Positions 1 through 56,039 of a stretch of 64,000 nt of DNA are shown here, piece after piece. Under the pieces are notes generated by a model. The model saw only the letters and a program-made list of their open reading frames with translations. It made no database searches and was not told where the DNA came from. Source of the stretch: Selaginella moellendorffii (Eukaryota > Plantae > Lycopodiophyta); NCBI RefSeq assembly GCF_000143415.4, contig NW_003314298.1:537986-601985 (forward strand). Reading direction: 5' to 3'. The translations under genes were made by a program, and so were the position numbers. The stretch's first letter is position 1; each line of letters starts with the position of its first letter.

Positions 1-1365
1 CCAGGGATCGAGCATTTCTCACACAGGTACCTCAATGGTTCTTCACTCAGCTTTCAGCTTTGCCGCAGCCAGTGCCTGCAAAACTGCTCGTGCTCGGCGT
101 TTTTCTTCTGGGAAGAATCCAGCTCCTGCTTTCTGATGGATAGCCTTCGTACGCTTCAAGCCGTGCCCAACCATCGCCACGTTGCATACGTGAAAGTAGC
201 GGCCACGAACACCACGAACGATGTCTTGCCTGTTCCAGCCACAGGATCGAAGCTTTCAGCTGGTGCCACTGCGGGGATCGTAGTTGGCAGCTTCTTTCTA
301 CTTCTGGTGGCCCTCCTGCCCATCATTTTGTGCATATCGAGAAAGCGGTCCAAGCAAGTGGAGGCTGTAGTCTACGACAGCGACAACTATCTCGAGACGA
401 TAGAGAACTTGAAACCAATGAGGTTCTGTCGAGCGGACTTGGAACGGATCACTGACAACTTCAGCAAGCTTATCGGAACTGGAAGCTTTGGAAGTGTGTA
501 CGAAGGTGTTCTTCCCGAGGGCAGGAAAGTGGCAGTCAAGAGGCTCGAAAGCACAGGACAGGGGAAGCGGAAGATCTTTGCTGAAGTTGCGGTGCTAGGA
601 ACGTTTCATCACTGGAACTTGGTGAGGCTACTCGGTTTTTGCGATCAAGGATGTCACGGGTTTATCATCTACGAGCATATTGGAAATGGTTCGCTGGACA
701 GATGGATCTATCGTGACAACGGGGAAAACGTCTTGGACTGGGAACTGAGGATGGGAATCGTGATGGGAATAGCACGAGGATTGGCTTACTTGCACGAAGA
801 ATGCATGGAAGTTCATCTCAACTTGAAGCCTCAAAACGTGTTACTCGACTCTTCGTTCGTTCCCAAGCTTTCCGGCTACGGAGTCTCCAGGATCATGGCT
901 CGAGAATCCCAGAGCTCAGCAGCTAAAACAGGTCTGGAGAGCTATCACCCACCAGAGTGGCTTCTCGACACCTCCATTACCGAGAAGTGCGACGTTTACA
1001 GCTTTGGAATTCTACTCTTGGAGATTATCAGCGGGAAAAGAAGCTCCAACAGCGACAAGTTTTATCTTCCGGCCCATGCATTGGATCTCACAAGGCAAGG
1101 CAGGCAAATGGAACTTGTGGACACGAGGATCGTCAAGGACTCGAGCGAGTCTAAAGTTCGTCAGGGTGTAAGTATTGCTTTCCAGTGCTTACAGGAAGAT
1201 CCAAGATCCAGGCCGTCCATGGGGGACGTTGTCCAGATGCTCCAAGGCTCCTGTGAGATTCCAGAAGTTCCCAGGAACAGCGCTTTCTTCTGGCTCAAGG
1301 ACAACGAAACTCGCTACTCGGAAGCTCACTCGCTGTTGATGGGCTTAAAGCACTCGATCGACTAG
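1..1365 (+). CDS. G-type lectin/S-domain (SD2-like) receptor-like kinase, 5'-truncated by window edge; probable pseudokinase
   Basis: Frame is open from base 1 and reads PAN/apple-like CRSQCLQNCSCSAFFF..SSSCF, then a TM helix (GIVVGSFFLLLVALLPIILCI), PMRF..ADL juxtamembrane, GTGSFGSVY, VAVK, HHWNLVRLLGFC, DVYSFG and RPSM kinase motifs. Confidence 0.9.
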   Translation, partial: PGIEHFSHRYLNGSSLSFQLCRSQCLQNCSCSAFFFWEESSSCFLMDSLRTLQAVPNHRHVAYVKVAATNTTNDVLPVPATGSKLSAGATAGIVVGSFFLLLVALLPIILCISRKRSKQVEAVVYDSDNYLETIENLKPMRFCRADLERITDNFSKLIGTGSFGSVYEGVLPEGRKVAVKRLESTGQGKRKIFAEVAVLGTFHHWNLVRLLGFCDQGCHGFIIYEHIGNGSLDRWIYRDNGENVLDWELRMGIVMGIARGLAYLHEECMEVHLNLKPQNVLLDSSFVPKLSGYGVSRIMARESQSSAAKTGLESYHPPEWLLDTSITEKCDVYSFGILLLEIISGKRSSNSDKFYLPAHALDLTRQGRQMELVDTRIVKDSSESKVRQGVSIAFQCLQEDPRSRPSMGDVVQMLQGSCEIPEVPRNSAFFWLKDNETRYSEAHSLLMGLKHSID

Positions 1366-3823: not shown

Positions 3824-5284
3824 TCAGTGACCAGTGATCTCCTCTGCCGATGATCGGTGATGGTGTTTGTCTCTACCCATTAACCATTGCAGCGTTCTCC
3901 TCGCAATCGACACGGTGGTCATTGATGATGTCGCAGAGCCCGTACTCTTCATCTCCGCGTTCGTACTACACACCGACGCCTGGTCCCAACTGCATACCGC
4001 CGCGGTACCACCGGTACCGCCAGCGGTACTACCCTGCTGCTCGTGCGAGCTTCCCCTGTTCTTCCACCACCACACCGCCGGCTGCTGCGGCTCCTCGTGC
4101 TGCTGCTGCCCTTGATCCACATTCAGCCGGAACGAGAAGGATTTCACCTTGTCCGAATCGAAGCTCTTATCGCCTACGCTGCTGGGCGCCTTGGAGTTCC
4201 TCCTCCACGGCGCCCAGCTCAGGAACGATGACGCCCGCGACGTACCGCCGGCCGCTAGCATTGGTCGCGGATCAATGTCGATGGTGACCCACGGACTGCC
4301 GCCCTCGCGCTCGGGTATACACTCGGACAGTGCCGCGCGGTGCCCGGGCGTACCGCGCGGCGGCGGCGGCCACTTTCTGTGCATGGGCGTCGGCGCAATC
4401 ACCACCAGTGCGACTTGCTGCTGCTCTCCTCCTCCCGCGCCGCCAGTGGATGGATCCAGGACGTATTCGTAGGATCCCATGGAGTAGGATCGCCGGCTCA
4501 GCGCCGCGGTCTCGGAGGGCGCTGCCGATTCTTCTCCCGAGTTTGCTGCCGCTGGGCAGAAGCGCCCGAGCTTGACTGGCACCACTCGCAGCGATTCCTG
4601 GCGGCCGCCCGCGAGATCTAGCGATCCTCCCACGCCTCCCTCCTCGGCCATGGAGGACTCGGCCCCAAAGCTGGCGGCGCTGACGCTGCTACTGGCGCCG
4701 AAGGACTCGACCCTCATACCGCCCAGTACCGCCGCGGTACAGCCTGAGCTGGAGGCGTCGGGCACGAGGCTGCAGCGGCACAGCGGGCAAGTGGAGTGGG
4801 ACAGCAGCCAAGTGTCGATGCATTCGATGTGGAAGGCGTGGCTGCACTTGGGGAGGAGGCGCAAACGATCGTCGCCGGAAAACTCGTTGAGGCATACCGC
4901 GCAGTCCGCCCCCTCCTTGAGGCCGCGTACCGCGCGGTACAGGAAGACGGGCAGCGCGTCGATGAATGCCTGCTCTACGCCCGAGTCGTGGAGGTGGAAG
5001 AGGTGCTGGAGCTGGCCCTGGAGCGAGTTGAGCGACCCACTGCTGTTGTTCCGCCGCGAGAGGCCATTGTTGGTGGATGCCGATGGGCGAGCGAAGCAGC
5101 GCGCGAGGAGATGGAGGAATCCCGAGAGGAAGAACACCACCGTGATGAGAACGATGATGACGACGACACTGGGGCTGAGCTGCGGCGTGCCGCTGGCGGC
5201 GCCGGCGGTACCGCCCGCGGTACCCGCGCCGGAAGGGCTGCTCGTCTCTGGATCGAGGTCCCGGATGCTGAAGGAGAGTGGCAT
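3824..5284 (-). CDS. ATL-family RING-H2 E3 ubiquitin ligase (ATL13/46/47-like), intronless
   Basis: N-terminal TM helix, LFHLHDSGVEQAFIDALPVF (GLD region), CAVCLNEF..LRLLPKCSHAFHIECIDTWLLSHSTCPLCR RING-H2, RRSYSMGSYEYV motif. Confidence 0.95.
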   Translation of the reverse strand: MPLSFSIRDLDPETSSPSGAGTAGGTAGAASGTPQLSPSVVVIIVLITVVFFLSGFLHLLARCFARPSASTNNGLSRRNNSSGSLNSLQGQLQHLFHLHDSGVEQAFIDALPVFLYRAVRGLKEGADCAVCLNEFSGDDRLRLLPKCSHAFHIECIDTWLLSHSTCPLCRCSLVPDASSSGCTAAVLGGMRVESFGASSSVSAASFGAESSMAEEGGVGGSLDLAGGRQESLRVVPVKLGRFCPAAANSGEESAAPSETAALSRRSYSMGSYEYVLDPSTGGAGGGEQQQVALVVIAPTPMHRKWPPPPRGTPGHRAALSECIPEREGGSPWVTIDIDPRPMLAAGGTSRASSFLSWAPWRRNSKAPSSVGDKSFDSDKVKSFSFRLNVDQGQQQHEEPQQPAVWWWKNRGSSHEQQGSTAGGTGGTAAVCSWDQASVCSTNAEMKSTGSATSSMTTVSIARRTLQWLMGRDKHHHRSSAEEITGH

Positions 5285-5813: not shown

Positions 5814-5861
5814 CCACGTCGTCGTGGAGTTCGACGTGGCGCGCGGTGGATGCCACGTGGC
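5814..5861. promoter_or_regulatory. ABRE/G-box cluster upstream of the ATL gene
   Basis: CCACGTCG (5814) and CGACGTGG (5832) form an inverted pair; perfect GCCACGTGGC at 5852-5861; GA-rich tract at ~5755-5770 lies between this cluster and the gene. Confidence 0.5.
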
Positions 5862-7181
5862 GGGTTTGGCGGGCAGTCGTGTCACTGCAATTCAAAAAAA
5901 CAGGAGGGTGCTTTCAGTTCAGACATGAAGAGCATTCAATGCAAACGCTGCCTTTCCCAAAAAATCATAAAATAAAGATTTAAAAGCAACGTTTTGTTTG
6001 ATCGTTGGTGAGTACCTAAGTTGTCAAATCCTTGCTTAGAATCTGGGAATTTATTTTGATGACATGAGCAAAAATTCGGAGCTCAATCTTCCCAAGACTT
6101 TTCCAAATGCCAGAGTGAGGTGATCATTGGATACCCAAAGCAATTTTACTAGTACTACGGTAGAAATTAAGAACCGAGGTTTTTTCTGTTTATTCCCACA
6201 AGTTCCTCGTTTCTTGCCCTTTGTTCGCAACGCTAGACAAGGAGTGATTTTTGGAGGGAAGTTTGCAACTCCAAGCCACTTGATTGATTTAACCAGACAA
6301 GAACTATCTCTTTGCTTAGAATATGGTCATCTTTGCCTTAACGAATATTCCTAGAATATCCAGCTATAGTTTAGGAACAAAATTTCATACTTTAATTCTT
6401 TTATAATCCTGTTTTATACTAATTTACAAGAATTATATACCTCAATTTTATTTCATGCTTCTACACCATACCACGATTTATAGCCCCAAAAGTATATATG
6501 GTTTCCATAGAGATTTTAGAAAAACTAAAGGTGAAAAGGATATATCACAAATATCCAAGTCTATACCTCAATCTAATTATTGATTTTCTTAGTTAGTTAG
6601 ATAACCACCTAATAAACACCAAAAGCCATTCCGGTTATTAAGTGGTTATTCCATTTTTCCCTGAAAATGGCAGGTAGGCAGCAGATTTCTCCATTATACA
6701 TGGTAGGTTTTAATTTGTATACCTAAGAAAGTTTTAAGATAACTGAGCAAAATGCCTAATTAAGTAAATAAGGAGAGCCCTAGTTTTAGTGAGAATATTA
6801 CTATCAAATCAATGTAAAATACTTCTCTATAGTTATTTGTATTGAATAATTTCTCTCAAATATTCCCAGAAAACTCTATGCCTATGATAATATAAATTTT
6901 ATTCTAATTATATAATATAAAATATACAACTTATTTATAATGCTAAATTTATAGCTTGTATTAATTAAAATCTTGTTTTTTTTTTCATTTGTGCAACTTC
7001 TTTTGTTCATATTATTAAGGACAGAATGTAAATATTCTTGATAGTTCTTAGGGTAATCATTCAAAAGTGACATGATAGTTTTAAGAAGAATCATTTATAT
7101 TAATTATGTAATTACATTAGTATTTAAAGATAATTAGGTTACTTTATAATGTATTATCTATTCTCATTTTATTTCTTACTT

Positions 7182-7460
7182 ATGGCTGGGAAAAATGTTC
7201 TATATATGATGAGTTTACTTTTTCTTTTTATATTAACTTTTATTTTTATAGCTAAAAGTGCACCACTAAAAACATGTGGTGAACATTGTGAAACAGATGA
7301 TGAATGCAAGGATCAAATTGCATGTGTTGATAAAATTTGCCAAGATGATCCAGATATGGATACTAATCCTTGTCCAAATATAGGTAAGAAAATTTCACCA
7401 CCTCCATTTGATACTTTATCTCCTCCTGATGAGGATTTAACTCCTCCCAATTTTAAATAA
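7182..7460 (+). CDS. Small secreted cysteine-rich peptide, kiwellin N-terminal (kissper)-like domain plus Pro-rich tail, copy 1 (92 aa)
   Basis: Hydrophobic signal peptide (LLFLFILTFIFIAKS/A), then C-x3-C-x5-C-x5-C-x4-C-x10-C with CQDDPD, matching kiwellin CNGPCRDLNDCDGQLICIKGKCNDDPQVGTHIC; tail SPPPFDTLSPPDEDLTPP. Confidence 0.7.
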   Translation: MAGKNVLYMMSLLFLFILTFIFIAKSAPLKTCGEHCETDDECKDQIACVDKICQDDPDMDTNPCPNIGKKISPPPFDTLSPPDEDLTPPNFK

Positions 7461-8490
7461 ATGTAATGCTAAGAACCTTACCAAATAAAATAAAATAAAA
7501 TAAAAATTATGTTATTCAAGTTAGTGTATTGATTAATGCATGTTGCTTTAGTCAATTTATATCAGATAACTTTTAAAAAATTCAAGGAATTTAAAATTGA
7601 TTATTTTGTGAATTTTTTTTTTAAAATGTGTTAAATTATAATTTATTCCTAATAATAGTAATTTGTTAGCTAATTTAAGTTTTAGGTATATCTTGAATAT
7701 ATTCAAAAACACCTCAATCTAACAATTGTGATTTTTCCACTATGAAACCTTCTCTAATTCATTGATAATCACTTAGTTAATAATATTATAATTATTTTTT
7801 AAATTTCCTCTCAATTCTCAATTTAGGACCAACCACCCTTCTGATCTTATAAATTTAGCAAACTCTAAAAGTTTATTATGTTAGTTTCATATATTAGTTC
7901 TTTGTTAGCTATAGTTTTATTAATTTTAATACAAGTTTTTATAATAAGAAATTTTGTTATGGGAATAGCAATATTAATTAGGGTTAGACCCCTTATCATA
8001 TACATGAACCAAATTTAGTTTAAATGAATAATTTGTGAGACACAAATCCCTAAGCCCTAAAGTGGAGCAGAAAAAGCACCATATTTTAGTAGTCAAAGCA
8101 AAAGTCTAATAAATGTAATATGTTTAGACCAAAGGCTCTAACTTAAAAAGTTGAGAATAGAAGTGAAATCCCAAAATAAGTGCCCAAGGAATGAGCTTCT
8201 AAAAAGGGACACAAGAAGGACTAACACATGGCAAGTGTCATGATACATGGAAATGTCAAAAACAAAGAGTCCGAAAAGGAATCCAAGATACAGTGCAAAA
8301 AAGAGTTCAAGATGGAGTCCAAAAAGGAATTTGAGATGGAGTTTGAGAAAGAGTTTGAGATGGAGTTCGATATAAACCCCAGATGGAGTTTGATATGGAC
8401 TTAGAGTCCGAGACCAAGTCTGAGTTCGAGTTCGAGTCGAGTCTGAGTCCAAAGGGTGAAAGCCTAAAGTGATTGTCTCCCAAACCCTAG

Positions 8491-9290
8491 TGTGGCGAAT
8501 TTGACTTCAGGTATCAAAAGTTACCTGTTGGCCAATCCTTATGGACACTCTTTTCTTACTGCCATGACAGTAGGAGGTAAGTATTGCTAGACCCTTTATC
8601 AGTCCCTCTTGTGCTAGTGGAGTTAAGTGGGCATTTCGAGTGTACTTAGACCGGACGAGCATAAGGACAGAATTCCTACGTGCTATTAGCTAAACACATT
8701 TAGCCCGATAAGGAGTTTCTGTCTCATTGTGTCTTGCACTGGCTAGTGATAATAACCCTCCTATATTGAGACTAGTCCCTCAATATTGCTGGATAATAGC
8801 TTACTATGTCTGCCAAACACCCTTACTATTATGCCCTTTGTGTTAGTTTTATTTCGGTCCTAAATTCTATTTGTGGAAAGTGTCCAGATTTGCTCATTTG
8901 GCATATCTACAGAATGTAAAGATTGTCTTGAACACAATGGTGTTCATCCCGTGTCCAAATTCACAATCTAAGGATATTCCATATTTAGTAAATTTCAAGC
9001 TTGTCCCAGAGACTAACTCCTAATACTAAGGGATGCTTGAAGTGAAAGCCCAAAGCGTGTGTTCCTCAAGGGGGGGGGGGGATGTGGGATAGTAGGGATA
9101 GTGGGTAGGTCAGGCATGCCTGACCAATTGAAGGCATAGTCTAGTTCCCATTTGTGTGCTTGTCCTTGTTCTATGTCCGACTTGGGCCTAAGCCCAAGTT
9201 CCATTCCATACTAGCTGGTGGAGTACCCATGTCCTTGCATTAGGCCAGAGATATGCCGAAATAGCGCCAGACTCCGTTTGGCTTCGTTTG
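8491..9290 (+). mobile_element. Partial LTR of the young LTR-retrotransposon family
   Basis: Starts TGTGGCGAAT and is colinear with the first ~800 bp of the full LTR at 62067->60936; truncated at the deletion junction at 9290. Confidence 0.85.
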
Positions 9291-12076
9291 GTTATCAAAA
9301 TTGGGGAAGTAATTCTCAAGTGTTCAAAAAAATGGCTTTGAACAAAAGTTAATGGTTGAGGACTTACATGCTTATGCATTAAACCATATTACGCTCGTCA
9401 GGTGACTTGCTAAGCGAGATTAACAAGTCAGGGGAGCAAAGACTTTAGTTAAAGGTATTGGCTCCAAAAGGGATGGCCCATGGGGCTAAATATACATGAT
9501 CATAGACTTGTTAAATGAGAGGATTTGGCAGTTTGAAGAAACTAAGTTCCTAAACTATGATCTATAGTGCACATTAAGTATAAATTGGTGCATTGGCGTA
9601 AGGAGTCACGCCAAACATTCTTAGTGATACTACTTGTAGATGCATATACGAAAGTTGGGTTTGAGTCATAACTTTGTAATGCTTGGGTTTGAGTCCCAAC
9701 TCACTAAGGGCATGGTGATGGTTTGAAATATGAAGACACTTATTTTTTAGTGGTTATAGACTCTCAATAAGGAGATTGGTTTGAGCACACTACCAAGTGG
9801 GGGATGCCTTGAAGTCGTGATGCACAGTTAAATTGTTTAGTGTGAAAGCTTGGCATATCTAACTTGAATAACTTTGGTGCAAGTGGCATCAAGGACATAG
9901 ATGAAATAAAGACACCCAATCTCAGTTGTCATGGACCCTTAGCCAAAAGGGTTGGCTTGGGTGCATTGCTAAGTGTGGGGGATGCCCCTAGGGTCATGGT
10001 TAACAACTTAAAAGTTTGGAAAACGTAATATTGATTAGCAAATCTATTAAAGTGTTAAGATGAGATCACTAAGTGATTTTATGGTTAAACAAGGATAAAG
10101 CCCTTGTGACATTAAGGAATAATGTTCCTAGTTCAAATTATTGATTTAAACTATTGGTAATAATATAACTTGGTCAAGGTGACCAAGTGGAAAGGACACC
10201 TAAGAGAAATGAGTTATAGCAATACAATAGTATTGTGAGTCCAAGAAAATAGTCTCTAAAGAAAGACCTATACATAAGTCGCAAAATTGGCCCGTGGATA
10301 GAGCCCACAACAGATAATGCTGGAAAAAATTACTAAGGGTGAACACCTTTTGGACTTAGTGAAACAAAGCTTTTACTACGAAACCAAAAAGATATCACGA
10401 ATATGGAAGTAGTGATCCTAAATTGTTTAGTACAATAATCAAAGGATAGTAGTAAAAGACTAATCACCAAGAATGGGTTATGGAAATTATTAAAAGGAAT
10501 CCAAATAACAAAGTTATGTCAAGAACACTCATGTGTTAGATGCTAACAGATTATGGAAAATGAAATATGTTTTTGAAAATAAATTCCCAAATGCTCCAAT
10601 TTGGCAAACGTGAAAGCTCCAAAAGATGGAGTGGCAAAATAGCCAAATGATAAAGCCATGAATAACATTATAAGTGGAATTTAGTGCCAAGGGTGGCACG
10701 AAATAAAAGTATTAGTGTGACCAACACGTGGTGGGTGATGATATAACCACTAAGGAGTCCAAGGCTAAAGTCAATACGGATGGACAAATGGGGTAACTTG
10801 GTGGTGGAGCCATGTGGCGGGTTTGGCAGGTAGTCGTGTCACTACAATTCAAAAAAACAGGAGGGTGCTTTCAGTTCAGACATGAAGAGCATTCAATGCA
10901 AACGCTGCCTTTCCCAAAAAATTATAAAATAAAGATTTAAAAGCAACGTTTTGTTTGATCGTTGGTGAGTACCTAAGTTGTCAAATCCTTGCTTAGAATC
11001 TGGGAATTTATTTTGATGACATGAGCAAAATTCAGAGCTCAATCTTCCCAAGACTTTTCCAAATGCCAGAGTGAGGTGATCATTGGATACACAAAGCAAT
11101 TTTACTAGTACTATAGGTTACGGTAGAAATTAAGAACTGAGGTATTTTCTGTTTATTCCCACAAGTTCCTCGTTTCTTGCCCTTTGTTCACAACGCTCCA
11201 GACAAGGAGTGATTTTTGGAGGGAAGTTTGCAACTTCAAGCTAACCAGACAAGAACTATCTCATATGGTCACTTTGCCTTAACGAATATTCCTAGAATAT
11301 TCAGTTATATTTTAGGAACAAAATTTTATACTTTAATTCTTTTATAATCCTGGTCTACTTAGAATTATATACCTCAATCTTATTTCATGCTTCTACACCA
11401 TACCTAAAAGTATACATGGTTTTTAGAAAAACTAAAGGTGAAAAGAATATATCACGAATATCCAAGTATATCCTATACCTCAATCTAATGATTGATTTTC
11501 TTATTAGTTATTTAGATAACCACCTAATAAACACCAAAAACCATTCCGGTGATTAAGTGGTTATTCCATTTTTCCCTGAAAATGGCAGGTAGGCAGCACA
11601 TTTCTCCATTATACATGTCAGGTTTTAATTTGTATACCTAAGAAAGTTCAAAATGCCTAATTAAGTAAATAAGGAGAGCCCTAGTTTTAGTAAGAATATT
11701 ACTATCAAATCAAAGTAAAATACTTCTCTATAGTTCTTTGTATTGAATAATTTCTTTCAAATATTCCCAGAAAACTCTATGCCTATGATAATATAAAATT
11801 TATTCTAATTATATAATATAAAATATACAACTTGTTTATAATGCTAAATGTATAGCTTGTACTAATTAATATCTTTTTTTTATTTGTGCAACTTCTTTTG
11901 TTCATATTATTAAGGACAGAATGTAAATATTCTTGATAGTTCTTAGGGTAATCATTCAAAAGTTACATGATAGTTTTAAGAAGAATCATTTATATTGATT
12001 ATGTAATTACTTTCGTATTTAAAGACAATTAGGTTACTTTATAGTATATTATCTATTCTCATTTTATTTCTTACTT

Positions 12077-12355
12077 ATGGCTAGAAAAAATGTTCTATAT
12101 ATTATGACTTTACTTTTTCTTTTTATATTAACTTTTATTTTTATAGCTAAAAGTGCACCACTAAAAACATGTGGTGAACATTGTGAAACAGATGATGAAT
12201 GCAAGGATCAAATTGCATGTGTTGATAAAATTTGCCAAGATGATCCAGATATGGATACTAATCCTTGTCCAAATATAGGTAAGAAAATTTCACCACCTCC
12301 ATTTGATACTTTATCTCCTCCTGATGAGGATTTAACTCCTCCCAATTTTAAATAA
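12077..12355 (+). CDS. Small secreted cysteine-rich peptide, kissper-like, copy 2 (92 aa)
   Basis: Same ORF as 7182-7460; differs only by three residues in the signal peptide. Confidence 0.7.
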   Translation: MARKNVLYIMTLLFLFILTFIFIAKSAPLKTCGEHCETDDECKDQIACVDKICQDDPDMDTNPCPNIGKKISPPPFDTLSPPDEDLTPPNFK

Positions 12356-13289
12356 ATGTAATGCTAAGAACCTTACCAAATAAAATAAAATAAAATAAAA
12401 ATTATGTTATTCAAGTTAGTGTATTGATTAATGCATGTTGCTTTAGTCAATTTATATCAGATAACTTTTAAAAAATTCAAGGAATTTAAAATTGATTATT
12501 TTGTGAAATTTTCTTTTAAAATGTACCAAATTATAATTCAATCCTAATAATAATAATTTTTTAGCTAATTTAAAATTTTGGTATATCTTGAATATTTTAA
12601 AAAACACTTCAATCTAAAAATTGTGAATTTTCCACTATTAAACCTTCTCTAATTCATTGATAATCACTTAGTTAATAATATTTCAAATTTTTTCAAATTT
12701 CCTCTCAATTCTCAATTTAGGACCAACCACCCTTCTGACCTTATGAATTTACCAAACTCTAAAAGTTTATTACATTAGTTTCATATATTAGTTTTTTTTT
12801 AGCTATAGTTTTATTAATTTTAATACAAGTTTTAGTAACTCAGGATAAGCAAAGCCTTGGAAGCTAGCCTCAAACGATACCATGCCTACAAGAGTGCCAA
12901 GAGCAGCGAAGACTAGACCATAGCAATCCTGGAGAATGCATTTCTGACCTAGTTTTTGGGACAGAAAGCACCATTGAAATAAGCTGTAATCATAGGAGTG
13001 TCCTCTTCTCATATACAAGAATGGATGAACTAAATTTCATTTAAATGAATAACCTGTGAGACAAAAATCCTTAAGCCCCAAAGTGGAGAAAAAAAGTACC
13101 ATATGGTAGTGGTCGAAGTGAAAGTCTAATAAACATAACATATTTGGACTAAAGGCTCTGATTTGAAAAATCAAGAGTAAGAATGCAACTCTAGAAAAAG
13201 TGCTTGAGGAATGAGTATGAAATAATTGGTGAATGAGTATCTAAAAAAGGACATAAGGAGGATTGACATATGGCAAGTGTCATAATGCA

Positions 13290-13800
13290 TGGAAGTGTAA
13301 AAAATGAGTTTGAAAAGGAGTCTGAGAAAGAATCTGAGATAAAGTCCAAAAAGGAGTACAAAATGGAGTCTAAGAAAGAATTTGAGATGGAGTTCAAGAA
13401 GGAGTTTGAGATAGAGTCCAATATAGACCCGAGATAGAGTCTGATATGGACCTGAGATGGAGTCTAATATGGACCCGAGATGGACCCGAGATGGAGTCTA
13501 ATATAGATCCGAGATGGACCCGAGATGAAGTTTAATATGGATCCGAGATGGACCCAAGATGGAGTTTAAGATGGAGTTCAAGATGGATCTTATGAGATGG
13601 ACTCGAGATGGAATTTGAGATGCACTGGAGATGGAGTTTGAGGTCAAGTCCAAGATGGACCTTAAATGGAGTCTAAGGTTGAGGCCAAGAAAGAGACTGA
13701 GACTGAGATTGAGATTGAAACCAAGACCAAGATCGAGACCGAGTTCGAGACCAAGTTCAAGAATAAGTCTGAGTTCGAGTCTGAGTCTAAGTCTGAGCTC
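13290..13800 (+). repeat. Degenerate 12-bp/6-bp tandem repeats (GAGATGGAGTYY, GAGWCY); shorter version at 8270-8450
   Basis: Visible periodic gagatggacc/gagatggagt units followed by gagtct/gagact hexamers. Confidence 0.8.
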
Positions 13801-13921
13801 GAGGGTGAAAGCCCAAAGCGATTGTCTCCTAGACCCTGAGGGGTTTGGTGAGCTCCAAAAGTATAATAAGGGGATAACTCTAATAGAGTCAATTTAGCCA
13901 GGAAAGGCTAATGGGTGATAA

Positions 13922-16900
13922 TATAACCATTAAGGAGTCAAATAAAGATGGACAAATGGGGTAATTTGGTAAAGTGTTTAAGAGCTGGCTCTAGCTCTTC
14001 CAAAAGATCAAATGGTCAATGCTCTAATCCAAGTGTGAGTGGCACTACCTATTTAGATACTTGGTGTGGCTCATCAGAACTTTATTCTAGCCACATGGAT
14101 AGGGCACCCAAAGGCACAAGATGGAGAGAGTACTCACAAGGCTCGTGTAAGAGCATAGTGTTTTAAAATGTTATCCTAAAGTTCTACATTGTGGAAAGGA
14201 AGAGGAGCAATCTTCTTGTGTAGTAACCAAGGATGCAATCATATGGCAAGTAAATCCCAAAGGTTAATAAGATGTAGTGGTTGGCCGTCAGGCCCTAACA
14301 CAGTAGTAATGTTGGTGAACACGGCCAAGGACGAAGAAAAACTTGGTGTGGATTGAAAAAGGAATGTTGGGGAAAGTTGTTCCTCATGTTTCTAGCCATC
14401 CTAAGGATGTTAAGAAGTGGTTCTAGGATGACCATTTATGGATGGATGGCTTAATGTTTGAGAGACAGGACTATGGCATAAGTGGCCTAGAACTACTAAT
14501 GAGACAAAGATAAATGGACATGGCTTTAGTATAACATACTGGTATATCAAAAGTACCTTTGGTGTATTGATCATGGGATCAAATACGTAGAGTACTTAAA
14601 TCAAGTGCAAAGACTGAGTCTCGAAGTTTGGCATATGACTTATGGAGGTTGTGAGTGAGACTCCTCCAAATGGTCGAAAGTGTAGTTAAAAATTTAAAGT
14701 AAAGTGAAAAATTTAGTTATTTACAATTTGATATCAAAGTTATTCTTTAGTCTGACTCTTATTAGTGGTTGAGTATATCACCACTCATATTGGCATCGGA
14801 AGGCCTTAAGAGTGGGCCTATTCTCAAAGAGTAGCATGTCAAAATGGCATGACTCTCTACTTTAGTGTATATGCAAACATGTAGGATGTGATGGATAAAA
14901 AAAGCTCAATAAGGGAATGATTTTGGGATCTTGGGAACAATATAAAATTTTCCTCAGAGAGTTAAGGATGTGATCCAGATGAGTGTTTGACTTAACAAAC
15001 TGGCTAACGTGGTTGTGATAAATAACTATAATTGAGATCATGGGAAGGATGAAAACTTCGAGACAATAAAGGAGTTGTAAGATTATCCTCATGAATTTGA
15101 GATGAAAATTAATAACTATGGGAAATTAAATACAAAAGAGGAACACAGGTCCTTGAAATGATAGTTGGGATTACTTTTAATAAATGATGGAATAACCCAA
15201 GGAGTTAAGGGTGTACTTAGAGGATGAATCGGTATTCTTATCATATGGACAGATAGTCCTAAAGGGCAAATGTTGCCTATATGGAACAAAGAATAATTAA
15301 ATGTTAGAGTAACACTTGCAAAGATGATCTTTATGAGTAAAACATAAATACAAGAAGTTGTATTCTAGCGAGTTGGCATATCAAAAGTAGTTATGAGGTT
15401 AAGACTTTATGGGTTATCAAATTAATAAAGTTTAAAAGATAAATGACTCAAGTGAAGTCAAGGAATAGTCTTAAAGGATTGGTGGAAAAATTTGGATTAA
15501 AGTGTATTGTACCCTACAAAGGATAGGGAGGATCATGAGATCCAAGTATGAAAACAATATGTATTTCATTAATGCTAGAATATGCTATATTAAAGTCATG
15601 GGAAAGGTGTTTTTGGAAAAAAATAACTTTGGCACAGAGTTATATATAAACACTATAAAGCAATGCTAACTAGTAGTTGGTATAAAAAATGACTAGTTTG
15701 ATTTTGATAAGACCTAGACACAAGTGGAAAGTGTTATTAAAATAGGATTAAAAAGCCAATAGGGTGAAGACCCCAAATGTCCCAAAGGATAATTTACCCC
15801 TTGTTAAAGTAACCCTAATGAAAACAATACCCTAGATATGGTAGAATTCATATATTTGTACTAAGTCTTGGTAGAAGTGTAGAAGTATCAACAATGAGTT
15901 GTAAAATATAATACTTATGAAGCAATTAAACAAAGGTTAAAAATGATTTGCTGGAATAGTGGGAGCTAACTTCTAGAGACTTCTTGGTTAGATAAAAACG
16001 AGGTTAGATACATTCTTTAAGGGATAGTATGCTTATGTTGCGATATAGTGAGTTTGTATCAATAAGAAACATTTATTGTTAGGAAATTTTATCATGAAAA
16101 CATATAATCATTTTAAAAACACTAAAGAGGTGACGTTTGGGTATTAAAGGGGCATTAGATAAGACCCAAAAGATGAAGTCTCTAAAAAAGAATGGATATA
16201 AACTACTATCTAATATCCAAGGTTGACAAAAGTTAAAGACAAGATAAGTTTAACTATCCAAAGTGGATCAAACCAAAAGAATTTTTGCATGGCTAGCAAT
16301 GAGCATAAAGAAGCCTATGTATAACAACATTAATCTTGATGTGTAGGATTATATAGTAAACATATCCAAATTAAAGAACCACTCCCTAAATCATTAAGTA
16401 AGTTCATCCTTAAAAATAGTTGCTAATGCATGGTTGAAAGGGCAAAGCTACCCTTCTAATTAGGAAGAGAATAATTAAAGGGAACATATAAAGCCAAAAT
16501 CAAGTAGTAAAGGGATAGAATTGAACCATAAAAATCAAAGAGTATAACCAAGGGTAATTATATAAGTTGGGAGTGGAAAATCAAGTGGTGCTCAAAAGTG
16601 TTGCTATTGGCAACTATAATGCTATAAAGACTCTAAAGTATAAAATTGTTAATGTTAGACTATATGGCAATTAAAAGGCATGTAAAAAGAAAGGTATTAG
16701 CAAAATAAAGAACAGAGTCCTTTTGAGGTTCTCAAAGACAATTTTAGGTATGTTAATACTTAGAAAAATAAATATAAATGTTTTATAAAAATGGGTGAAA
16801 TCAAATTGGTATAGCAAAAACGTGGTATTGAAGCTTGCCATGAGATGAGGTTATCAAAATTGGGGAAGTAATTCTCAAGTGTTCAAAAAAATGGCTTTGA

Positions 16901-19900
16901 ACAAAAGTTAATGGTTGAGGACTTACATGCTTATGCATTAAACCATATTACGCTGGTCAGGTGGCTTGTTAAGCGAGATTAACAAGTCAGGTGAGCAAAG
17001 ACTTTAGTTAAAGGTATTGACTCCAAAAGGGATGGCCCATGGGGCTAAATATGCATGATCATAGACTTGTTAAATGAGAGGATTTGGCAGTTTGAAGAAA
17101 CTAAGTTTCTAAACTATGATTTGTAGTGCACATTAAGTATAAATTGGTGCACTGGCGTAAGGAGTCACGCCAAACATTCTTAGTGATATTACTTGTAGAT
17201 GCATATACGAAGGTTGGGTTTGAGTCGTAACTTTGTAATGCTTGGGTTTGAATCCCAACTCACTAAGGGCATGGTGATGGTTTGAAATATGAAGACACTT
17301 ATTTTTCAGTGGTTATAGACTCTCAATAAGGAGATTGGTTTGAGCACACTACCAAGTGGGGGATGCCTTGAAGTCGTGATGCACAATTAAATTGTTTAGT
17401 GTGAAAGCTTGGCATATCTAACTTGAATAACTTTAGTATAAGTGGTATCAAGGACATAGATGAAATAGAGACACCCAATCTCAGTTGTCATGGACCCTTA
17501 GCCAAAAGGGTTGGCTTGGGTGCATTGCCAAGTGTGGGGGATGCCCCTAGGGTCATGGTTAACAACTTAAAAGTTTGGAAACTGTAATATTGATTAGCAA
17601 ATCTATTAAAGTGTTAAGATGAGATCACTAAGTGATTTTATGGTTAAACAAAGATAAAGCCCTTGTGATATTAATGAATAAGGTTCCTAGTTCAAATTAT
17701 TGATTTAAACTATAATAATATAACTTGGTCAAGGTGACCAAGTGGAAAGGACACCTAAGAGAAATGAGTTATAGCAATACAATAGTGTTGTGAGTCCAAG
17801 AAAATAGTCTCTAAAGAAAGACCTATACATGAGTCGCAAAATTGGCCCGTGGATAGAGCCCACAACAGATAATGCTGGAAAGAATTACTAAGGGTGAACA
17901 CCTTTTGGATTTAGTGAAACAGAGCTTTTACTACGAAACCAAAAAGATATCACGAATATGGAAGTAGTGATCCTAAATTATTTAGTACAATAATCAAAGG
18001 ATAGGAGTAAAAGACTAATCACCAAGAATGGGCTATGGAAATTATTAAAAGGAATCCAAATAACAAAGTTATGTCAAGAACACTCATGTGTTGGATGCTA
18101 ACAGATTATGGAAAATGAAATATGTTTTTGAAAATAAATTCCCAAATGCTCCAATTTGGCAAACGTGAAAACTCCAAAAGATGGAGTGGCAAAATAACCA
18201 AATGATAAAGCCATGAATAACATTAGCATGAATTATAGATAAGTGGAATTTAGTTCCAAGGGTGGCACGAAATAAAAGTATTAGTGTGACCAACACATGG
18301 TGGGTGATGATATAACCACTAAGGAGTCCAAGGCTAAAGTCAATACAGATGGACAAATGGGGTAACTTGGTGAAGTGTTTAAGAATCAACTCTAGCTCCC
18401 CTGGAAGATCAAATGGTCAATGTTCCTAATCTAAATGTGAGTGGCACTACCTACTTGGATACATAATATGGCTCATTGGAACCTCACTTTAACCACATAG
18501 TTAGGGCACCCAAAGGCGGAAGGTAAGGAGAGTACCACAAGGTTTATATAGAGCTATGGTGTTTCGAAATATTGTCCCAAAATCTTAGACTATAGAAAAG
18601 GAGAGGAGTAATCCTCTTATGTAGTAACCAAGGATGCAATTATATGGCAAAGAAGTCTTAGAGGTTAATGGGATGTAGTGGTTGGGCATTTAAGCCCTAA
18701 CCCAATGGTAGTGTTGGCAAACATAGTTAGGGACAAAAAGAGATTTGGTGGGGATTGAAAAAGAGATGTTGGGGAAAGTTGTTCCCCATGTCTTTGGGCA
18801 TCTTAAGGATACTAAAGAGTAATTTTAAAATGACCACTCATAGACGAATGGTTTAGTCTTTAAGAGATGGGACTATGGCACAGATGATCTAAAACTACCA
18901 ATAAGACAGGGTAAATGGACATAGTTTTAGTATAACATGCTGATATATTAGTAGTACCTTTGGGGTGTCAATCATAAGATTGAATACGTGAAGTATTTGG
19001 ACCAAATTGTCGCAAATGTGACTTCGGGTATCGAAAGTTACTTGTCGACCAGTCCTTATAGACACTCTTTCCTTACTGCCACGATGGCAGGAGGTTGGTA
19101 TTGCTAGACCCTTTATCAGCCCCTCTTGTTCAAGTGTTAGTAAACTGGACTTAGCATCTGTACTTGGCCGGATGAGCATAAGGACGGAATTCCTAAGTGT
19201 CTATTTGGCCAAGCATACTTGGCCCGGCTTTTTAGTTCTCTTTTGCTCTGTCTTGCACTGGCTTGACAAGAACCCTCGCATATTGAGATTGGTCCCTCAA
19301 TATCGCTGGATGATAGCTTACCGTGTTTGCCAAACACCCTCGCTATCATGCCCTTTGTGTTAGTCTCAATTCGTCCCAGATGCTATTTATGGAAAGTGTC
19401 CAGATTTGCTCATTTGGCATATCTACAGAATGTAGAGATCGGCCTGAACACAATGGTGTTCGTCCCGTGTTCAAATTCGCAATCTAAGGACATTCCACAT
19501 TCAAGACATGCTCAGAGCTATTGACTAAATGCATTAGTGAGCTTATTGCAGTTGAGTTGGATTCGAGTGGTCATTTAGTTTGTGCTTGTCTATGAACTTT
19601 TATCTCGTACCTGAGGTATTACGTTCATATTGGATGAGTATATGACTCGATGATATGAGTTTAGTGTTGAGTCTTGTGAACGCAAGTTGAGGAGTGATTG
19701 TTAGTTGCTTTGTGACTAGTGATTACTTGTAGACTTCATCAAGGACCGTTGACACTTGCTTTGCTTGATGATGATTTAGCAGTGGTGGGCTTGCTTTACC
19801 GGATGGTGTTGCAGAGGATCGTGTCATTAGGCTAACATGGTTTTTCTATGTTGGCATGTCAATTCCTTTGTCGATATCATTTGGTTACATTTGGTCTATA

Positions 19901-22900
19901 ATGTTGGATTTCATTGAGTCTTGGACGTGGTGATTCACTCCTTGAGGAAGTGTTATCCGTGACTGAGTATTGTTGAGAGATTGGTCTCGGATACTGACTA
20001 AAGTATCTTTGACTTCGGTTAGCTTTGTTGCTGGAGAGTTTTGAGTGGTGATTCACTCGTGCTTTCTTCTAGCTTTGTTTTGGTGTTGATGACATTGAAG
20101 TGATGCCTTGTCATTGACATTGTTGATGTTGAGGTAAAATGAAATGAGATATCTCTCCATAGGATTGATATTGAGTTTCATTAGTCTTGATGGAGATAGT
20201 GTTGATGGTTTGGTTGTAGCTTTATGTTGTTGGCATTTGTACAATTGCTAGTTAGCAACTGTGTTGACGTTCAAATGAACTGAGTGGCAAGTTGAGTTAG
20301 TTGTGTTCTACACAAGATTGCTTAGTTAAGGTTAAGTTTTCGCTTTTCCTTGAAAAGTGATTTAGTCGTGGACAATGCTACCTCTATGAGAGGAAGAGTT
20401 AGTGATTGGTATTGAAGTGTTTGAATCCTTATTGGATTTGAGTTGGACTATATCAATCATTGATGATTCTTCTTGTGCTTGTTATGAAGTGAGTTACGTC
20501 TTGCTATAGATGGATTCATGGAGGGTCATTTAGTGATCACTTGTTGAGCATAGCTCCATTGTGCTTAGCTTTTGGATTGATGCAGAAATGCTCTTCATTA
20601 GCTTTGGCATTATGAAATTTGGCTTATGGATGTGTTGAAGAAGACATTGTGGGTTGTACCATGATTTCTTCTTAAGCATTGAAGTTAGCTTCTATAAGAC
20701 TCGTGATCATTATTAAGTAAGACTTAGCTATAGGCTTCTTCAAGCTTTGGTTCTTTGAGTTTTATGCTCATTGTTCCATTTGTTAGAAGTTGTTGGGGAA
20801 GGCATTTTGGCTCATTAGCTTCGATGTTGAAGTTGGCTTTGCATCTGGCAATCATTGGTGATGATTGGCTATCATCTAGGGTAGTTAATTGTCCTTATCA
20901 CAAGTTTTGCTTGATTATTGTTGGTTTAGAATTATTTGCTATTCTTCGGGATGGTAGATTCTTTCTTAAACGATGATTATACATCACTACATTGATGGGC
21001 TAATTGACGATCTTTCATGATAGTTGGTTGTTTTCTTTGATGGCTTTGGCTTTTCGTAATACCACATGTTCTTTGTGGTTTGCTCTGGATTGGTCTCTTG
21101 GGTTTGAGACGTCAGTAGGATGTTGCTGGCACTTGCTTAGGCAACTTGAGTTCCTTGGTATTGTTGGCTGGGATCTATTCCGATTGGCTAGTGCAATAGT
21201 TGATATGAACAAGCGTTTGTTTGCTTTGCAAGATTCATTTTGTTCTGTTGATTATTGCTTGAGTTAGTTCTCATAGATTATGATGTTATTTCCTTCGGGT
21301 GAGACATTTGCGAGCATTGTGCTGTTTAGTCAATGATACTTTGTGTTCTTTGAGTTGTGTTTTGTGAGTTGTTTGGCATGCTATCTGCCATTTTCGGTAG
21401 TTCAGTTTTATCATTGAGTTTCCTTGATGATCTACTTGCTATTGAATTTTGTTGGATGGTGATTCCTATGTTTACCACTTATAATGATCTTGGTGGTTCC
21501 TATCTACAATACTACTGGTTTATCGGATGATAACTTGCTTAGAATACTTTTGTGTTCTACTCTAAGATATAATCACTAGTAATTAAGCTTCTCAGATATC
21601 ATTGTCTCTGACTTTGATATAGTCCCTATATCTTGATCTTTGAGTTTGGGCCAGTATAGGCAGACTGGCTTCGGCACTTCGTGTGCATGGTGAAATCTCT
21701 AGTCATGGGGTAGCTACTGTCGACTGGTCACATAACCCGCCTCTCTGTCGATGTTCCTTATTCCATTCAAAGGGCGTGACCGTGTAAACAACTCCAACTG
21801 CCTGTTTACAATAGTCTATCTAAACCTTACCGACGGGTTTGGTTTCTTTGCTCAGGAGGGTTGGGGCCTCTGGCTCCTCTCTCTATGTCCTTGCAGGCAG
21901 GGGCATATCACACTTTTGTAGCTGGGTGACACCCAGAGCAGCAAGGGTGGCTGACTCCGTTAGTCATTTCCTTGTCGGTGACGGCCGGAAGGTGTCTGAG
22001 CTGGTAGCGCATCCGCGTTAGACAAAGAGGTTACCCCCTAACTCATTTAAGTTGGTGCATTTCTCACATAGTGTGAGTACCGTGAACTTTTTATGGAGTT
22101 GTTTCCTTGGCGGTATTCTAGACTCGAGTATGCATCGACAAGGACGTCGATCTTCCCCAAGGGGGGGAGAGTGTCGCGAATGTGACTTCGGGTATCGAAA
22201 GTTACTTGTCGACCAGTCCTTACGGACACTCTTTCCTTACTGCCACGATGGCAGGAGGTCGGTATTGCTGGACCCTTTATCAGCCCCTCTTGTTCAAGTG
22301 TTAGTAAACTGGACTTAGCATCTGTACTTGGCCGGATGAGCATAAGGACGGAATTCCTAAGTGTCTATTTGGCCAAGCATACTTGGCCCGGCTTTTTAGT
22401 TCTCTTTTGCTCTGTCTTGCACTGGCTTGACAAGAACCCTCGCATATTGAGATTGGTCCCTCAATATCGCTGGATGATAGCTTACCGTGTCTGCCAAACA
22501 CCCTCGCTATCATGCCCTTTGTGTTAGTCTCAATTCGTCCCAGATGCTATTTGTCCAGATTTGCTCATTTGGCATATCTACGGAATGTAGAGATCGGCCT
22601 GAACACAATGGTGTTCGTCCCGTGTCCAAATTCGCAATCTAAGGACATTCCATATTTAGTAAGTTTCGAGCTTGTCCCAGAGACTAACTCCTGATACTAA
22701 GGGAGGCTTTAGGGATGCTGATATATTAGTAGTACCTTTGGGGTGTCAATCATAAGATTGAATATGTGAAGTATTTGGACCAAATGCAAAGTTAAATGGC
22801 ATAGATGCCATCCATGGGGCTAATAAGTCCTTAAGTCTGGAATAGGATTTATAAAGGTTGTAAATGAGACTCTCCCAAGTGGTTAGAGGTGTGGTTAAGT

Positions 22901-55092: not shown

Positions 55093-56039
55093 GGTACTGT
55101 GGAATTCTAAAAGCTAGAACTGGAATTCTAAAAGCTCTTTCTCTTTTTTTGAAGCAATGCAATTGAAGCATTGGCCTCGAGGCGTTAGCATCTTGGGAAA
55201 ACAAGCCGTGGAAAAAAAATCACATTTTAGAAGAGAGGGGCAGGTTAACTGCGGGAACGATAGTTCACACCAGTTGGAATTAAGTATCATATATATGGTA
55301 CGAACATCACTGGCCTCTGGAGGTTTGGATCAATTGTTTCTCTTAGTGGAAGCTACTAGTGATGCTAACCGGCCATCTACTGTAAGTGATGGTTTCTTTT
55401 GGTTTGCTTCTTTGTTTCTCCAGGCCCTTGCAAGCGTGAGTGATGGTTTCTTTCTCCATCACTGTTGGAAGCGTGAGATGGTTTATTTCTTTCTTTTTTC
55501 CTTGGTTTTCCTTCATCGATGGTTTGGTTCTTTAACATTGTTTCTCCAGGCTTTCAATTTTGTGTCACTCATTGCTGGCAGCCCCAAAGACCAGCGAAAC
55601 TGTAACGGACCTCTTAATAAGCAGTGCTATCATCCTCCAGGAGGGAGATGGCAGCGGTGGTGCTGAGCTTCCTAAAGTTCTAAATAAAAGCTTCCAGCTG
55701 GAAGAGTGCTCAAGACCTCAAGCATGAGTTTGAGGATGAGTATATGGTTTCCAAATTGGACACACCACCTTTGGTTGTTCCAAAAATCCCTTTTCAATTG
55801 GAAGAAAAAGACTTAGAACCTAAGAGTTCGTTTTCTTTCCTGGTTTTTGGCTCTGTAATCGTTTTCTCAAGTGTCAACTATATAGCTGCGATCGATCCAT
55901 AGGACGACCTCAAGAGAAAAAACTGCCATTACTTGAAAAATATGTCTTGCATGTAACAGGTTATCTGGAAAGGTGGTATGCTCGTCCTTTTAGTGAACGA
56001 AGTCTGCTGAGGTGTCACTTACTTGTGTTCCTGTTGCTT

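What the first reader, a model, noticed from the sequence alone, without database searches (positions are those of the whole stretch)
7182..12355. Stand-alone kissper (kiwellin N-domain) secreted peptide genes inside a transposon island
Seen: two 92-aa ORFs (7182-7460, 12077-12355) with a signal peptide, then LKTCGEHCETDDECKDQIACVDKICQDDPDMDTNPC, a Pro-rich tail and a stop. Established: this Cys spacing (3-5-5-4-10) and C-x-DDP motif define the kissper domain of kiwifruit kiwellin, normally fused via a Pro linker to a barwin-like core. Kiwellins include defence proteins (maize Kwl1 blocks the Ustilago Cmu1 effector), and free kissper is known as a proteolytic product. Seen: no kiwellin core (VALSTGW/VVDECDS) anywhere downstream. 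The ORF is extremely AT-rich and acidic, unlike the other genes here, yet keeps all six Cys and has no stop. Inference: a genetically encoded kissper-only peptide family, possibly a defence or signalling mini-protein, likely missed by gene finders.
Basis: partly seen in the sequence, partly recalled or inferred. Interest (0 to 1): 0.75.

Follow-up and report, generated by a model that had tools for sequence, protein, structure and literature searches.

The report
Stand-alone kissper peptide gene pair
A spikemoss (Selaginella moellendorffii) genome carries two tandem, unannotated copies of a small gene encoding only the cysteine-knotted "kissper" peptide, which normally forms the front end of kiwellin plant-defence proteins; the homology is solid, but no RNA was seen, so whether the plant uses it is open.

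Summary
Both 92-codon ORFs exist exactly as described. The window is Selaginella moellendorffii. The ORFs encode a signal peptide, one six-cysteine domain and an acidic Pro-rich tail.

The domain is a true kissper homologue:
- A search of 1.84 billion proteins returned kissper-bearing proteins as the best hits, including full kissper-kiwellins.
- A profile of kiwellin N-domains matches it (hhalign 97.4%, E 1e-11).
- The predicted fold superposes best on the N-terminus of a kiwellin cluster.

No kiwellin core lies anywhere in the 64-kb window or in 21 kb of the second haplotype. The one kissper-kiwellin gene I checked is intronless, and S. moellendorffii has other intronless kissper-only genes. 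So this is not a kiwellin first exon.

All four copies (two per haplotype) are intact, unannotated and homogenised by gene conversion. GC by codon position shows past coding constraint.

Weak points:
- Three RNA-seq runs gave zero reads, with no positive control.
- Variation among the copies looks neutral.
- Two near-invariant kissper residues are replaced.

The "transposon island" is an AT-rich, repeat-rich, gene-free tract with no transposase ORF. This scan had already noted stand-alone kissper genes elsewhere in this genome. Function is inferred only.

The parts
7182..7460 (+). Copy 1 of the kissper-only ORF (92 codons plus stop)
   Evidence: best library-wide hits are kissper-bearing proteins
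7182..7259 (+). Predicted signal peptide, residues 1-26: short charged start, 19-residue hydrophobic core, A-K-S before the likely cut
   Evidence: read from the sequence. The region aligns to signal peptides of kissper-kiwellins in tblastn. No signal-peptide predictor was available.
7260..7382 (+). Kissper-type domain, residues 27-67; Cys1 to Cys6 span 7275-7373
   Evidence: (hhalign 97.4%, E 1e-11)
7383..7457 (+). Acidic Pro-rich tail, residues 68-92, with SPPP and SPP motifs. It starts at the donor-like AG|GTAAGA (cut 7383/7384).
   Evidence: The other Selaginella kissper-only proteins, and the kiwellin linkers, are also Pro-rich after Cys6.
7121..7128 (+). TATA-like TATTTAAA, 54 bp before the ATG, kept in copy 2
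   Evidence: inference only
12077..12355 (+). Copy 2 of the ORF. The mature peptide is identical to copy 1; the signal peptide has three changes (G3R, M9I, S11T).
7214..7612 (+). 399-bp block identical between the copies (equals 12109-12507), inside flanks that differ by about 8-9%: a gene-conversion tract
5845..7939 (.). Duplicated segment A, 91.6% identical to 10803-12833. It continues as 8004-8488, which matches 13025-13837 at 74-81%.
10803..12833 (.). Duplicated segment A', carrying copy 2. It sits between two halves (9290-10803 and 13912-14597) of a repeat that is contiguous at 16849-18998.
8489..9289 (.). Dispersed repeat between the copies, with further copies at 19008-19501, 22170-22709 and 61255-62069(-)

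Best explanation
These are two tandem copies of an intact, intron-free, unannotated S. moellendorffii gene. Its whole product is a signal peptide, one kissper-type domain and a short acidic Pro-rich tail. It belongs to a small lycophyte group of kissper-only genes and is not an exon or remnant of a kiwellin gene.

Shown: homology to kissper; absence of a kiwellin core; intactness of all four haplotype copies; homogenisation of the tandem copies by gene conversion; past coding constraint.

Inferred: the precursor enters the secretory pathway and is cut after Ser26. The 66-residue product forms three disulfides in a knottin-like fold and is released into the apoplast, with the SPPP/SPP tail possibly hydroxylated and glycosylated. 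There it would act on its own as kissper is thought to act after being cut from kiwellin: as a membrane-active or protein-binding peptide in plant-microbe contact. Expression is probably confined to a tissue or condition that was not sampled.
For: Species: a window PPR protein is encoded exactly on GCA_000143415.2 GL377602.1. The neighbouring RING protein is 99% identical to an S. moellendorffii protein.

Homology:
- phmmer against 1.84 billion proteins gave 15 hits. The best are kissper-bearing proteins, including the full kissper-kiwellins P0006 (E 1.7e-5), P0007 and P0014.
- The six Cys, DD and Thr are invariant across 16 aligned domains.
- hhalign against kiwellin N-domains gave 97.4%, E 1e-11 over 40 columns.
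- The top shape match in the ESM Atlas is a Kiwellin-like cluster: 40 residues, rmsd 1.4 A.

Stand-alone:
- No core by motif scan or tblastn in the 64-kb window or in the 21-kb locus L008 on the second haplotype.
- The Oldenlandia kissper-kiwellin gene has no intron.
- Selaginella P0005/P0024 and the ORF L004:3964-4335 are intronless kissper-only genes with Pro-rich tails.

Real ORF:
- The open frame is improbable by chance, and GC1/GC2/GC3 are 45/37/12% (p = 2e-6).
- All four copies are intact.

Gene conversion: a 399-bp identical block in the window, and D60N and P63L shared by both copies of the other haplotype.
Against: - No RNA: zero reads in three RNA-seq runs (9.2 million reads each, no positive control), and none of the sampled words in 17 further runs of the species.
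- None of the four products is in the 15-billion-protein collection, which includes assemblies of public runs.
- Variation among the four copies is 7 nonsynonymous sites to 1 synonymous. Allelic divergence of the ORF (1.4%) equals that of its flanks (1-2%), so no current constraint is visible.
- Two near-invariant kissper residues are replaced: Gly by Asp and Leu by Ile.
- The gene lies in AT-rich, repeat-rich DNA.
- Fold matches to solved structures are not significant. The model was built from an alignment that contains kissper domains, so the Atlas match is not independent.
Confidence: 0.55

Rival explanations
1. A silent relic. The ORFs derive from a once-functional kissper-only gene but are no longer expressed. 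They sit in AT-rich, repeat-laden DNA that is probably silenced. They stay open only because gene conversion keeps copying one intact version and too little time has passed.
For: - No RNA reads, and no words in other runs of the species.
- Unannotated on both haplotypes.
- 7:1 nonsynonymous to synonymous variation, and ORF divergence equal to that of the flanks.
- Near-invariant Gly and Leu replaced.
- GC3 has fallen to the local background.
Against: - All four copies are open although a frame of this composition closes quickly.
- The strong codon-position GC signal means the protein was held while silent sites drifted to AT.
- All six Cys, DD and Thr are kept.
- The TATA-like box and ATG context are kept in both copies.
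- The RNA test had no positive control.
Confidence: 0.3
2. The first exon of a larger spliced gene. The AG|GTAAGA at 7383/7384 is a real donor, and the signal peptide plus kissper are joined to a downstream exon (a kiwellin core, a receptor-kinase body or something else).
For: - The site matches the donor consensus well, right after the domain.
- Kissper does occur fused to other bodies: kiwellin cores, and receptor kinases in celery and carrot.
Against: - No kiwellin core, or other match to these proteins beyond residue 75, in 64 kb or on the other haplotype.
- No ORF of 150 aa or more for 16 kb downstream.
- The one kissper-kiwellin gene checked has no intron.
- The reading frame continues for 25 codons into a Pro-rich tail like those of the other kissper-only proteins.
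Confidence: 0.07
3. A member of another cysteine-rich peptide family (defensin-like, late-nodulin/NCR-like, EB module) that merely resembles kissper, or a chance ORF.
For: Weak Pfam hits to EB (E 0.0013), AtDEF-like (E 0.002) and Nodulin_late (E 0.4). Language-model neighbours are assorted toxin and nodulin clusters.
Against: - All those hits fall below Pfam's cut-offs.
- Bona fide kissper domains get the same weak EB, DPY and DUF7107 hits, because Pfam has no kissper model.
- Library-wide and profile searches point to kissper.
- Chance is excluded.
Confidence: 0.03

Closest known systems
Kissper, the N-terminal 39-residue domain of kiwifruit kiwellin (Act d 5; PDB 4PMK, 4X9U), and of Kwl1-type 'Kissper-Kiwellins' (PMC9813671)
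   Same: Identical six-Cys spacing, with DDP after Cys5 and Thr three residues before Cys6. It follows a signal peptide directly and is followed by a Pro-rich stretch. Sequence and profile similarity are significant.
   Different: No double-psi beta-barrel core follows. Identity is only about 30-35%. The peptide is strongly acidic (pI 4.1). Near-invariant Gly and Leu are replaced by Asp and Ile. Free kissper is known as a proteolytic product, not as the product of a gene of its own.
S. moellendorffii hypothetical proteins D8T8C4/D8TBN1 (P0005/P0024), and the ORF L004:3964-4335 (C-terminal part of the old model D8R356)
   Same: Same species. They have a signal peptide, kissper-type domain(s) and a Pro-rich tail, with no kiwellin core and no intron. 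The first domain of the L004 ORF is the closest relative (47% by alignment, 53% by tblastn).
   Different: They carry two domains in tandem, are basic or His-rich rather than acidic, and have ordinary GC content. Two of them are annotated, as hypothetical proteins. The window genes have one domain, are AT-rich and are unannotated.
Inhibitor cystine-knot peptides (squash trypsin inhibitors, spider and cone-snail toxins)
   Same: The predicted domain superposes on them over 25-33 residues at rmsd 1-2.5 A.
   Different: No match is significant (Foldseek E 0.4 or more; Z 3.1 or less). There is no sequence relationship. I did not verify the disulfide connectivity.
Legume nodule-specific cysteine-rich (NCR) and defensin-like peptide genes
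   Same: A working analogy: small secreted Cys-rich peptides, tandemly duplicated, in AT-rich and repeat-rich DNA, often missed by gene finders.
   Different: Pfam scores fall below the cut-offs, the Cys pattern differs, and there is no signal-peptide intron here.
Apiaceae receptor kinases with two kissper domains as ectodomain (Apium graveolens XP_074325755, Daucus XP_017235062, annotated as G-type lectin S-receptor-like kinases)
   Same: Kissper used without a kiwellin core. These are among the best library-wide hits.
   Different: Membrane-anchored kinases in angiosperms, with two domains.

Membership tests
Kissper domain | Six Cys spaced C-x3-C-x5-C-x5-C-x4-C-x10-C | tested here: met
   gap-free register with 4X9U residues 1-36
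Kissper domain | Invariant Asp-Asp(-Pro) after Cys5, and Thr three residues before Cys6 | tested here: met
   invariant in 16 aligned domains including the window
Kissper domain | Near-invariant Gly two residues after Cys3, and Leu four residues after Cys3 | tested here: not met
   the window has Asp and Ile; these positions are invariant in 8 kiwellin N-domains
Kissper domain | Significant sequence similarity to N-domains of proteins that carry a KWL1 core | tested here: met
   phmmer E 1.7e-5 to P0006 in 1.84 billion proteins; hhalign 97.4%, E 1e-11; tblastn E 1e-7 to 5e-10
Kissper domain | Small three-disulfide fold as in kiwellin's N-terminus | tested here: inconclusive
   AF2 domain pLDDT is about 83. 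4x9u_A ranks 6th at E 0.76. The top Atlas row is Kiwellin-like, 40 residues at 1.4 A. The model's alignment contained kissper domains.
Kissper domain | pH-dependent, voltage-gated pore formation in lipid bilayers (reported for kiwifruit kissper, cited in PMC9813671) | not testable with these tools
   needs synthetic or recombinant peptide
Kiwellin (Kwl1, Pfam PF24300 KWL1) | Double-psi beta-barrel core with beta-hairpin extension | tested here: not met
   no KWL1 hit; no core motifs; no tblastn match beyond residue 75 in the window or L008
Defensin-like / late nodulin (NCR) | Pfam score above the gathering threshold | tested here: not met
   AtDEF-like 18.8 against a cut-off of 25; Nodulin_late 11.4 against 30.4

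The most novel reading that the evidence does not exclude
Kissper is an autonomous peptide module, not just the head of kiwellin. On this reading, lycophytes encode it as free secreted peptides (single or tandem) that work on their own: as pore-formers, or as ligands or decoys for the kissper-kiwellin receptor kinases that this scan noted in the same genome. The same module was recruited independently as a receptor-kinase ectodomain in Apiaceae. It was also picked up by plant-associated bacteria, where it sits in a MacB-TolC-DsbA export operon.
Probability: 0.2. Interest if true: 0.7.

Novelty: new variant of a known kind. Interest (0 to 1): 0.5.

Why it matters
The biological role of kissper is unknown. 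It has been studied only as a fragment cut from kiwifruit kiwellin in vitro. The family survey PMC9813671 treats it as restricted to the Kwl1 subfamily.

Genes that encode kissper alone would show that the peptide can work without the barrel domain. They would offer a natural system for testing its function separately. They also bear on whether kissper was fused to, or split from, the kiwellin core early in vascular-plant history.

The value is limited by three things: no expression evidence for this locus, the small size of the family, and the fact that this scan had already noted similar genes elsewhere in the same genome.

Tried and rejected
- Pfam scan of the ORFs gave only sub-threshold EB, AtDEF-like and Nodulin_late hits. 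This is uninformative, because real kissper domains behave the same way and Pfam's KWL1 model covers only the core.
- phmmer of the ORF against PDB sequences did not find kiwellin.
- The word-based homologue search found nothing.
- Language-model neighbours were non-specific, all below 0.9.
- Foldseek and VIA against the PDB were not significant.
I reran it without that row.
- Exact look-ups of the four products and of the L004 ORF were all absent from the collection.
- The look-up for a second kissper-kiwellin gene structure (Lycium isoform P0025) found no record, so the intronless precedent rests on one gene.
- A weak tblastn hit at 55478-55639 proved to be a hydrophobic chance match.
Full report
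**Observation.** Each encodes four parts:
- a hydrophobic N-terminal signal-like segment;
- a domain with Cys spacing 3-5-5-4-10 and C-x-DDP;
- a 25-residue acidic tail rich in Pro (SPPP, SPP, TPP);
- a stop codon.

In a six-frame scan of all 64 kb this Cys pattern occurs only at these two places. The ORF has 31% GC with GC3 at 12%, whereas neighbouring genes have 51-65% GC. The mature peptide has pI 4.1. The ORF is not a chance product. A 276-nt frame of its own dinucleotide make-up stays open in 0.04% of simulations. An ORF of 92 aa or more appears in 0.7% of simulated copies of the surrounding kilobase. GC at codon positions 1, 2 and 3 is 45, 37 and 12% (p = 2e-6), whereas a nearby chance ORF shows no such periodicity.

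**Source.** The window is plant DNA, with PPR, NPH3, RING-H2 and kinase genes. A PPR protein of the window is encoded exactly on scaffold GL377602.1 of assembly GCA_000143415.2. The neighbouring RING-H2 protein is 99% identical to an S. moellendorffii RefSeq protein on scaffold GL377579.1. That scaffold is collinear with the window at about 96% identity, so it is the second haplotype. Earlier notes of this scan name the same species.

The ORF aligns to it without gaps, 11 of 36 identical, with all six Cys and DDP in register.

An exhaustive phmmer search of 1.84 billion representatives gave 15 hits at E of 1e-3 or less. Ten of the 14 hits I fetched (all but P0004) carry the kissper Cys pattern:
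- full kissper-kiwellins P0006 (E 1.7e-5), P0007 (Lycium) and P0014 (Oldenlandia), each with a Pfam KWL1 core after the domain;
- kiwellin fragments;
- celery and carrot receptor kinases with two kissper domains;
- two S. moellendorffii proteins.

Across 16 aligned domains the six Cys, the two Asp and one Thr are invariant, and the window keeps them all. A profile of eight kiwellin N-domains matches the window domain with hhalign probability 97.4% and E 1e-11 over 40 columns.

Pfam gives only sub-threshold EB, AtDEF-like and Nodulin_late hits. The same is true of genuine kissper domains, because the KWL1 model begins after them.

An AlphaFold model built from the domain alignment has pLDDT of about 83 over the domain and a disordered tail. 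Foldseek and VIA against the PDB list knottins and 4x9u_A, none of them significant. In the ESM Atlas the top shape match is a Kiwellin-like cluster, 40 residues at 1.4 A. The structure results are consistent but not independent, since the alignment contained kissper domains.

One defining feature fails. The Gly and Leu that are invariant in kiwellin N-domains are Asp and Ile here. I file the domain as a divergent kissper homologue, not as a kiwellin.

**Is it stand-alone?** No kiwellin-core motif occurs in any frame of the window. In tblastn, three full kissper-kiwellins match the window only over their first 61-75 residues, at the two ORFs. Nothing matches their cores in the 64-kb window or in 21 kb of the other haplotype. 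There is no ORF of 150 aa or more between 5975 and 28647.

The donor-like AG|GTAAGA at 7383/7384 is real sequence. The one kissper-kiwellin gene whose locus I could read (Oldenlandia, L003:1001-1672) is uninterrupted. So there is no precedent for an intron between kissper and the core. A second look-up failed.

S. moellendorffii also has other kissper-only genes:
- P0005/P0024 carry a signal peptide, two kissper-like domains and a Pro/His-rich tail. P0005 is intronless at L002:6001-6399.
- The ORF L004:3964-4335 encodes a signal peptide, two domains and a Pro-rich tail. An old gene model fused it to an Eaf7-like gene, and the RefSeq models drop it.

The first domain of the L004 ORF is the closest relative of the window peptide: 47% in the alignment and 53% by tblastn. 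Pro-rich tails are thus a family trait, which argues that the window's tail is coding and not intron read-through.

**Duplication and haplotypes.** The segment 5845-7939 is repeated at 10803-12833 at 91.6% identity. The repeat continues more weakly at 8004-8488 and 13025-13837. Copy 2 with its flanks lies between two halves of a repeat that is contiguous at 16849-18998. The halves overlap by 72 bp. The copy was therefore inserted by a DNA-level duplication.

Within the duplicated segment, 7214-7612 is identical to 12109-12507 (399 bp), while the flanks differ by about 8-9%.

The second haplotype holds both copies, and both are intact (L008:7835-8113 and 673-951, minus strand). There the two copies share D60N and P63L relative to the window. 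They are near-identical only over 7210-7472 in window numbering. The 3' flank of copy 2 keeps its own differences, which the window's copy 2 has lost. So at least one conversion, from copy 1 to copy 2, happened on the window haplotype after the haplotypes split, and the pair evolves in concert.

**Constraint.** Long-term constraint is shown by the conserved framework and by the codon-position GC pattern. Silent sites have fallen to the local AT-rich background while positions 1 and 2 have not.

Short-term constraint is not visible. Eight variable sites among the four copies are 7 nonsynonymous to 1 synonymous. Allelic divergence of the ORF (4 of 279) equals that of its flanks at 1-2%. The numbers are too small to decide.

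**Annotation and expression.** None of the four products, nor the 103-aa upstream-ATG variant, is in the 15-billion-protein collection. The upstream ATG at 7149 is absent from copy 2 of both haplotypes, so 7182 is the conserved start. No gene is called over the copies on the second haplotype.

Three RNA-seq runs labelled with the species gave no read on 6700-8100. Each run was sampled at 9.2 million reads, about 12% of the run. Seventeen other runs of the species hold next to none of the sampled words. A fourth run, of unrecorded type and added only because it held part of the stretch, gave low-depth contigs over 7517-8100 alone, with no RNA evidence and nothing over the ORF. Expression is therefore unproven, not excluded.

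**Setting.** The tract at 6-26 kb has 24-43% GC, is full of dispersed and tandem repeats and has no long ORF. I found no transposase or reverse-transcriptase ORF. 'Transposon island' should read 'AT-rich repeat tract'.

**Mechanism (inferred).** The steps I infer are:
1. Transcription starts downstream of the TATA-like box at 7121-7128.
2. The precursor enters the ER co-translationally and is cleaved after A-K-S (Ser26).
3. Three disulfides form a knottin-like domain.
4. The peptide is secreted, and the SPPP/SPP tail may be hydroxylated and arabinosylated.

By analogy with kiwifruit kissper, the free peptide could act at membranes. Kissper forms pH-dependent, voltage-gated pores in artificial bilayers, and its role in the plant is unknown (PMC9813671). 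Its net charge of about -8 makes a classical cationic antimicrobial action unlikely. Binding of a protein or cation, or a ligand or decoy role, fits as well.

**Literature.** Nineteen papers in the library contain 'kissper', and none describes a gene encoding kissper alone. The family survey reports 143 of 915 kiwellins with a kissper domain, restricted to Kwl1, and does not mention stand-alone forms.

**Earlier notes of this scan.** They report kissper-only genes on other pieces of this genome: a three-copy array, also without RNA, and an unannotated intron-free gene. They also report kissper-kiwellin receptor kinases. I confirmed the species and the existence of a small kissper-only family independently. 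I did not see those loci.

**Verdict.** The kissper-only reading is supported at the level of sequence, architecture and annotation. Function and expression remain open. It is a new architectural variant of a known domain, of moderate interest.

Noticed in passing
L005:3049-3360, L006:3032-3343, L007:1528-1839 (proteins P0029-P0031): A 103-aa protein with a signal peptide and one kissper domain, 68% identical over 37 residues to an angiosperm kissper (E 1e-16), lies in a bacterial operon. Upstream are a MacB-type ABC exporter and a TolC-like OEP. Downstream is a DsbA-like thioredoxin, then IS5, MerR and Tn3 genes. The flanking insertion elements match Methylorubrum/Methylobacterium plasmids at 85-91%. 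This may be a plant-to-bacterium transfer of a kissper gene into a plant-associated bacterium.
   Followed up: partly
proteins P0002/P0018 (Apium graveolens) and P0016 (Daucus carota): These receptor kinases have two tandem kissper domains as their whole ectodomain, followed by a membrane helix and a kinase. They are annotated as 'G-type lectin S-receptor-like kinase B120' although no lectin domain was hit in the one scanned, P0002.
   Followed up: partly
L004:3001-4335 (GL377571.1): The old model SELMODRAFT_406856 (P0003) fuses an Eaf7-like gene to a separate 123-aa ORF (3964-4335) that has its own ATG, a signal peptide and two kissper domains. The RefSeq models P0022/P0023 end before it, which leaves the kissper gene unannotated.
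   Followed up: partly
window 9290-14597 and 16849-18998: The copy-2 segment (10803-13837) sits inside a repeat that is contiguous elsewhere. 18301-18372 matches both edges (10732-10803 and 13912-13983). This is a 72-bp flanking duplication, too long for a transposon target-site duplication.
   Followed up: partly
window 8267-8368 and 13300-13677: Arrays of 12/24-nt (and, in the second copy, 23/34/48-nt) tandem repeats lie downstream of each kissper copy. The array is much expanded in the second copy.
   Followed up: no
L008 reverse-complement 14467-16762: The second haplotype carries about 2.3 kb between the copies that the window lacks at that place. It resembles window 13055-14725 at 68%.
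   Followed up: no
window 136-1365: The kinase-domain ORF is the 3' part of a B-lectin receptor-kinase gene. An 843-aa model with B_lectin and Pkinase domains is called at the matching place on the other haplotype.
   Followed up: no
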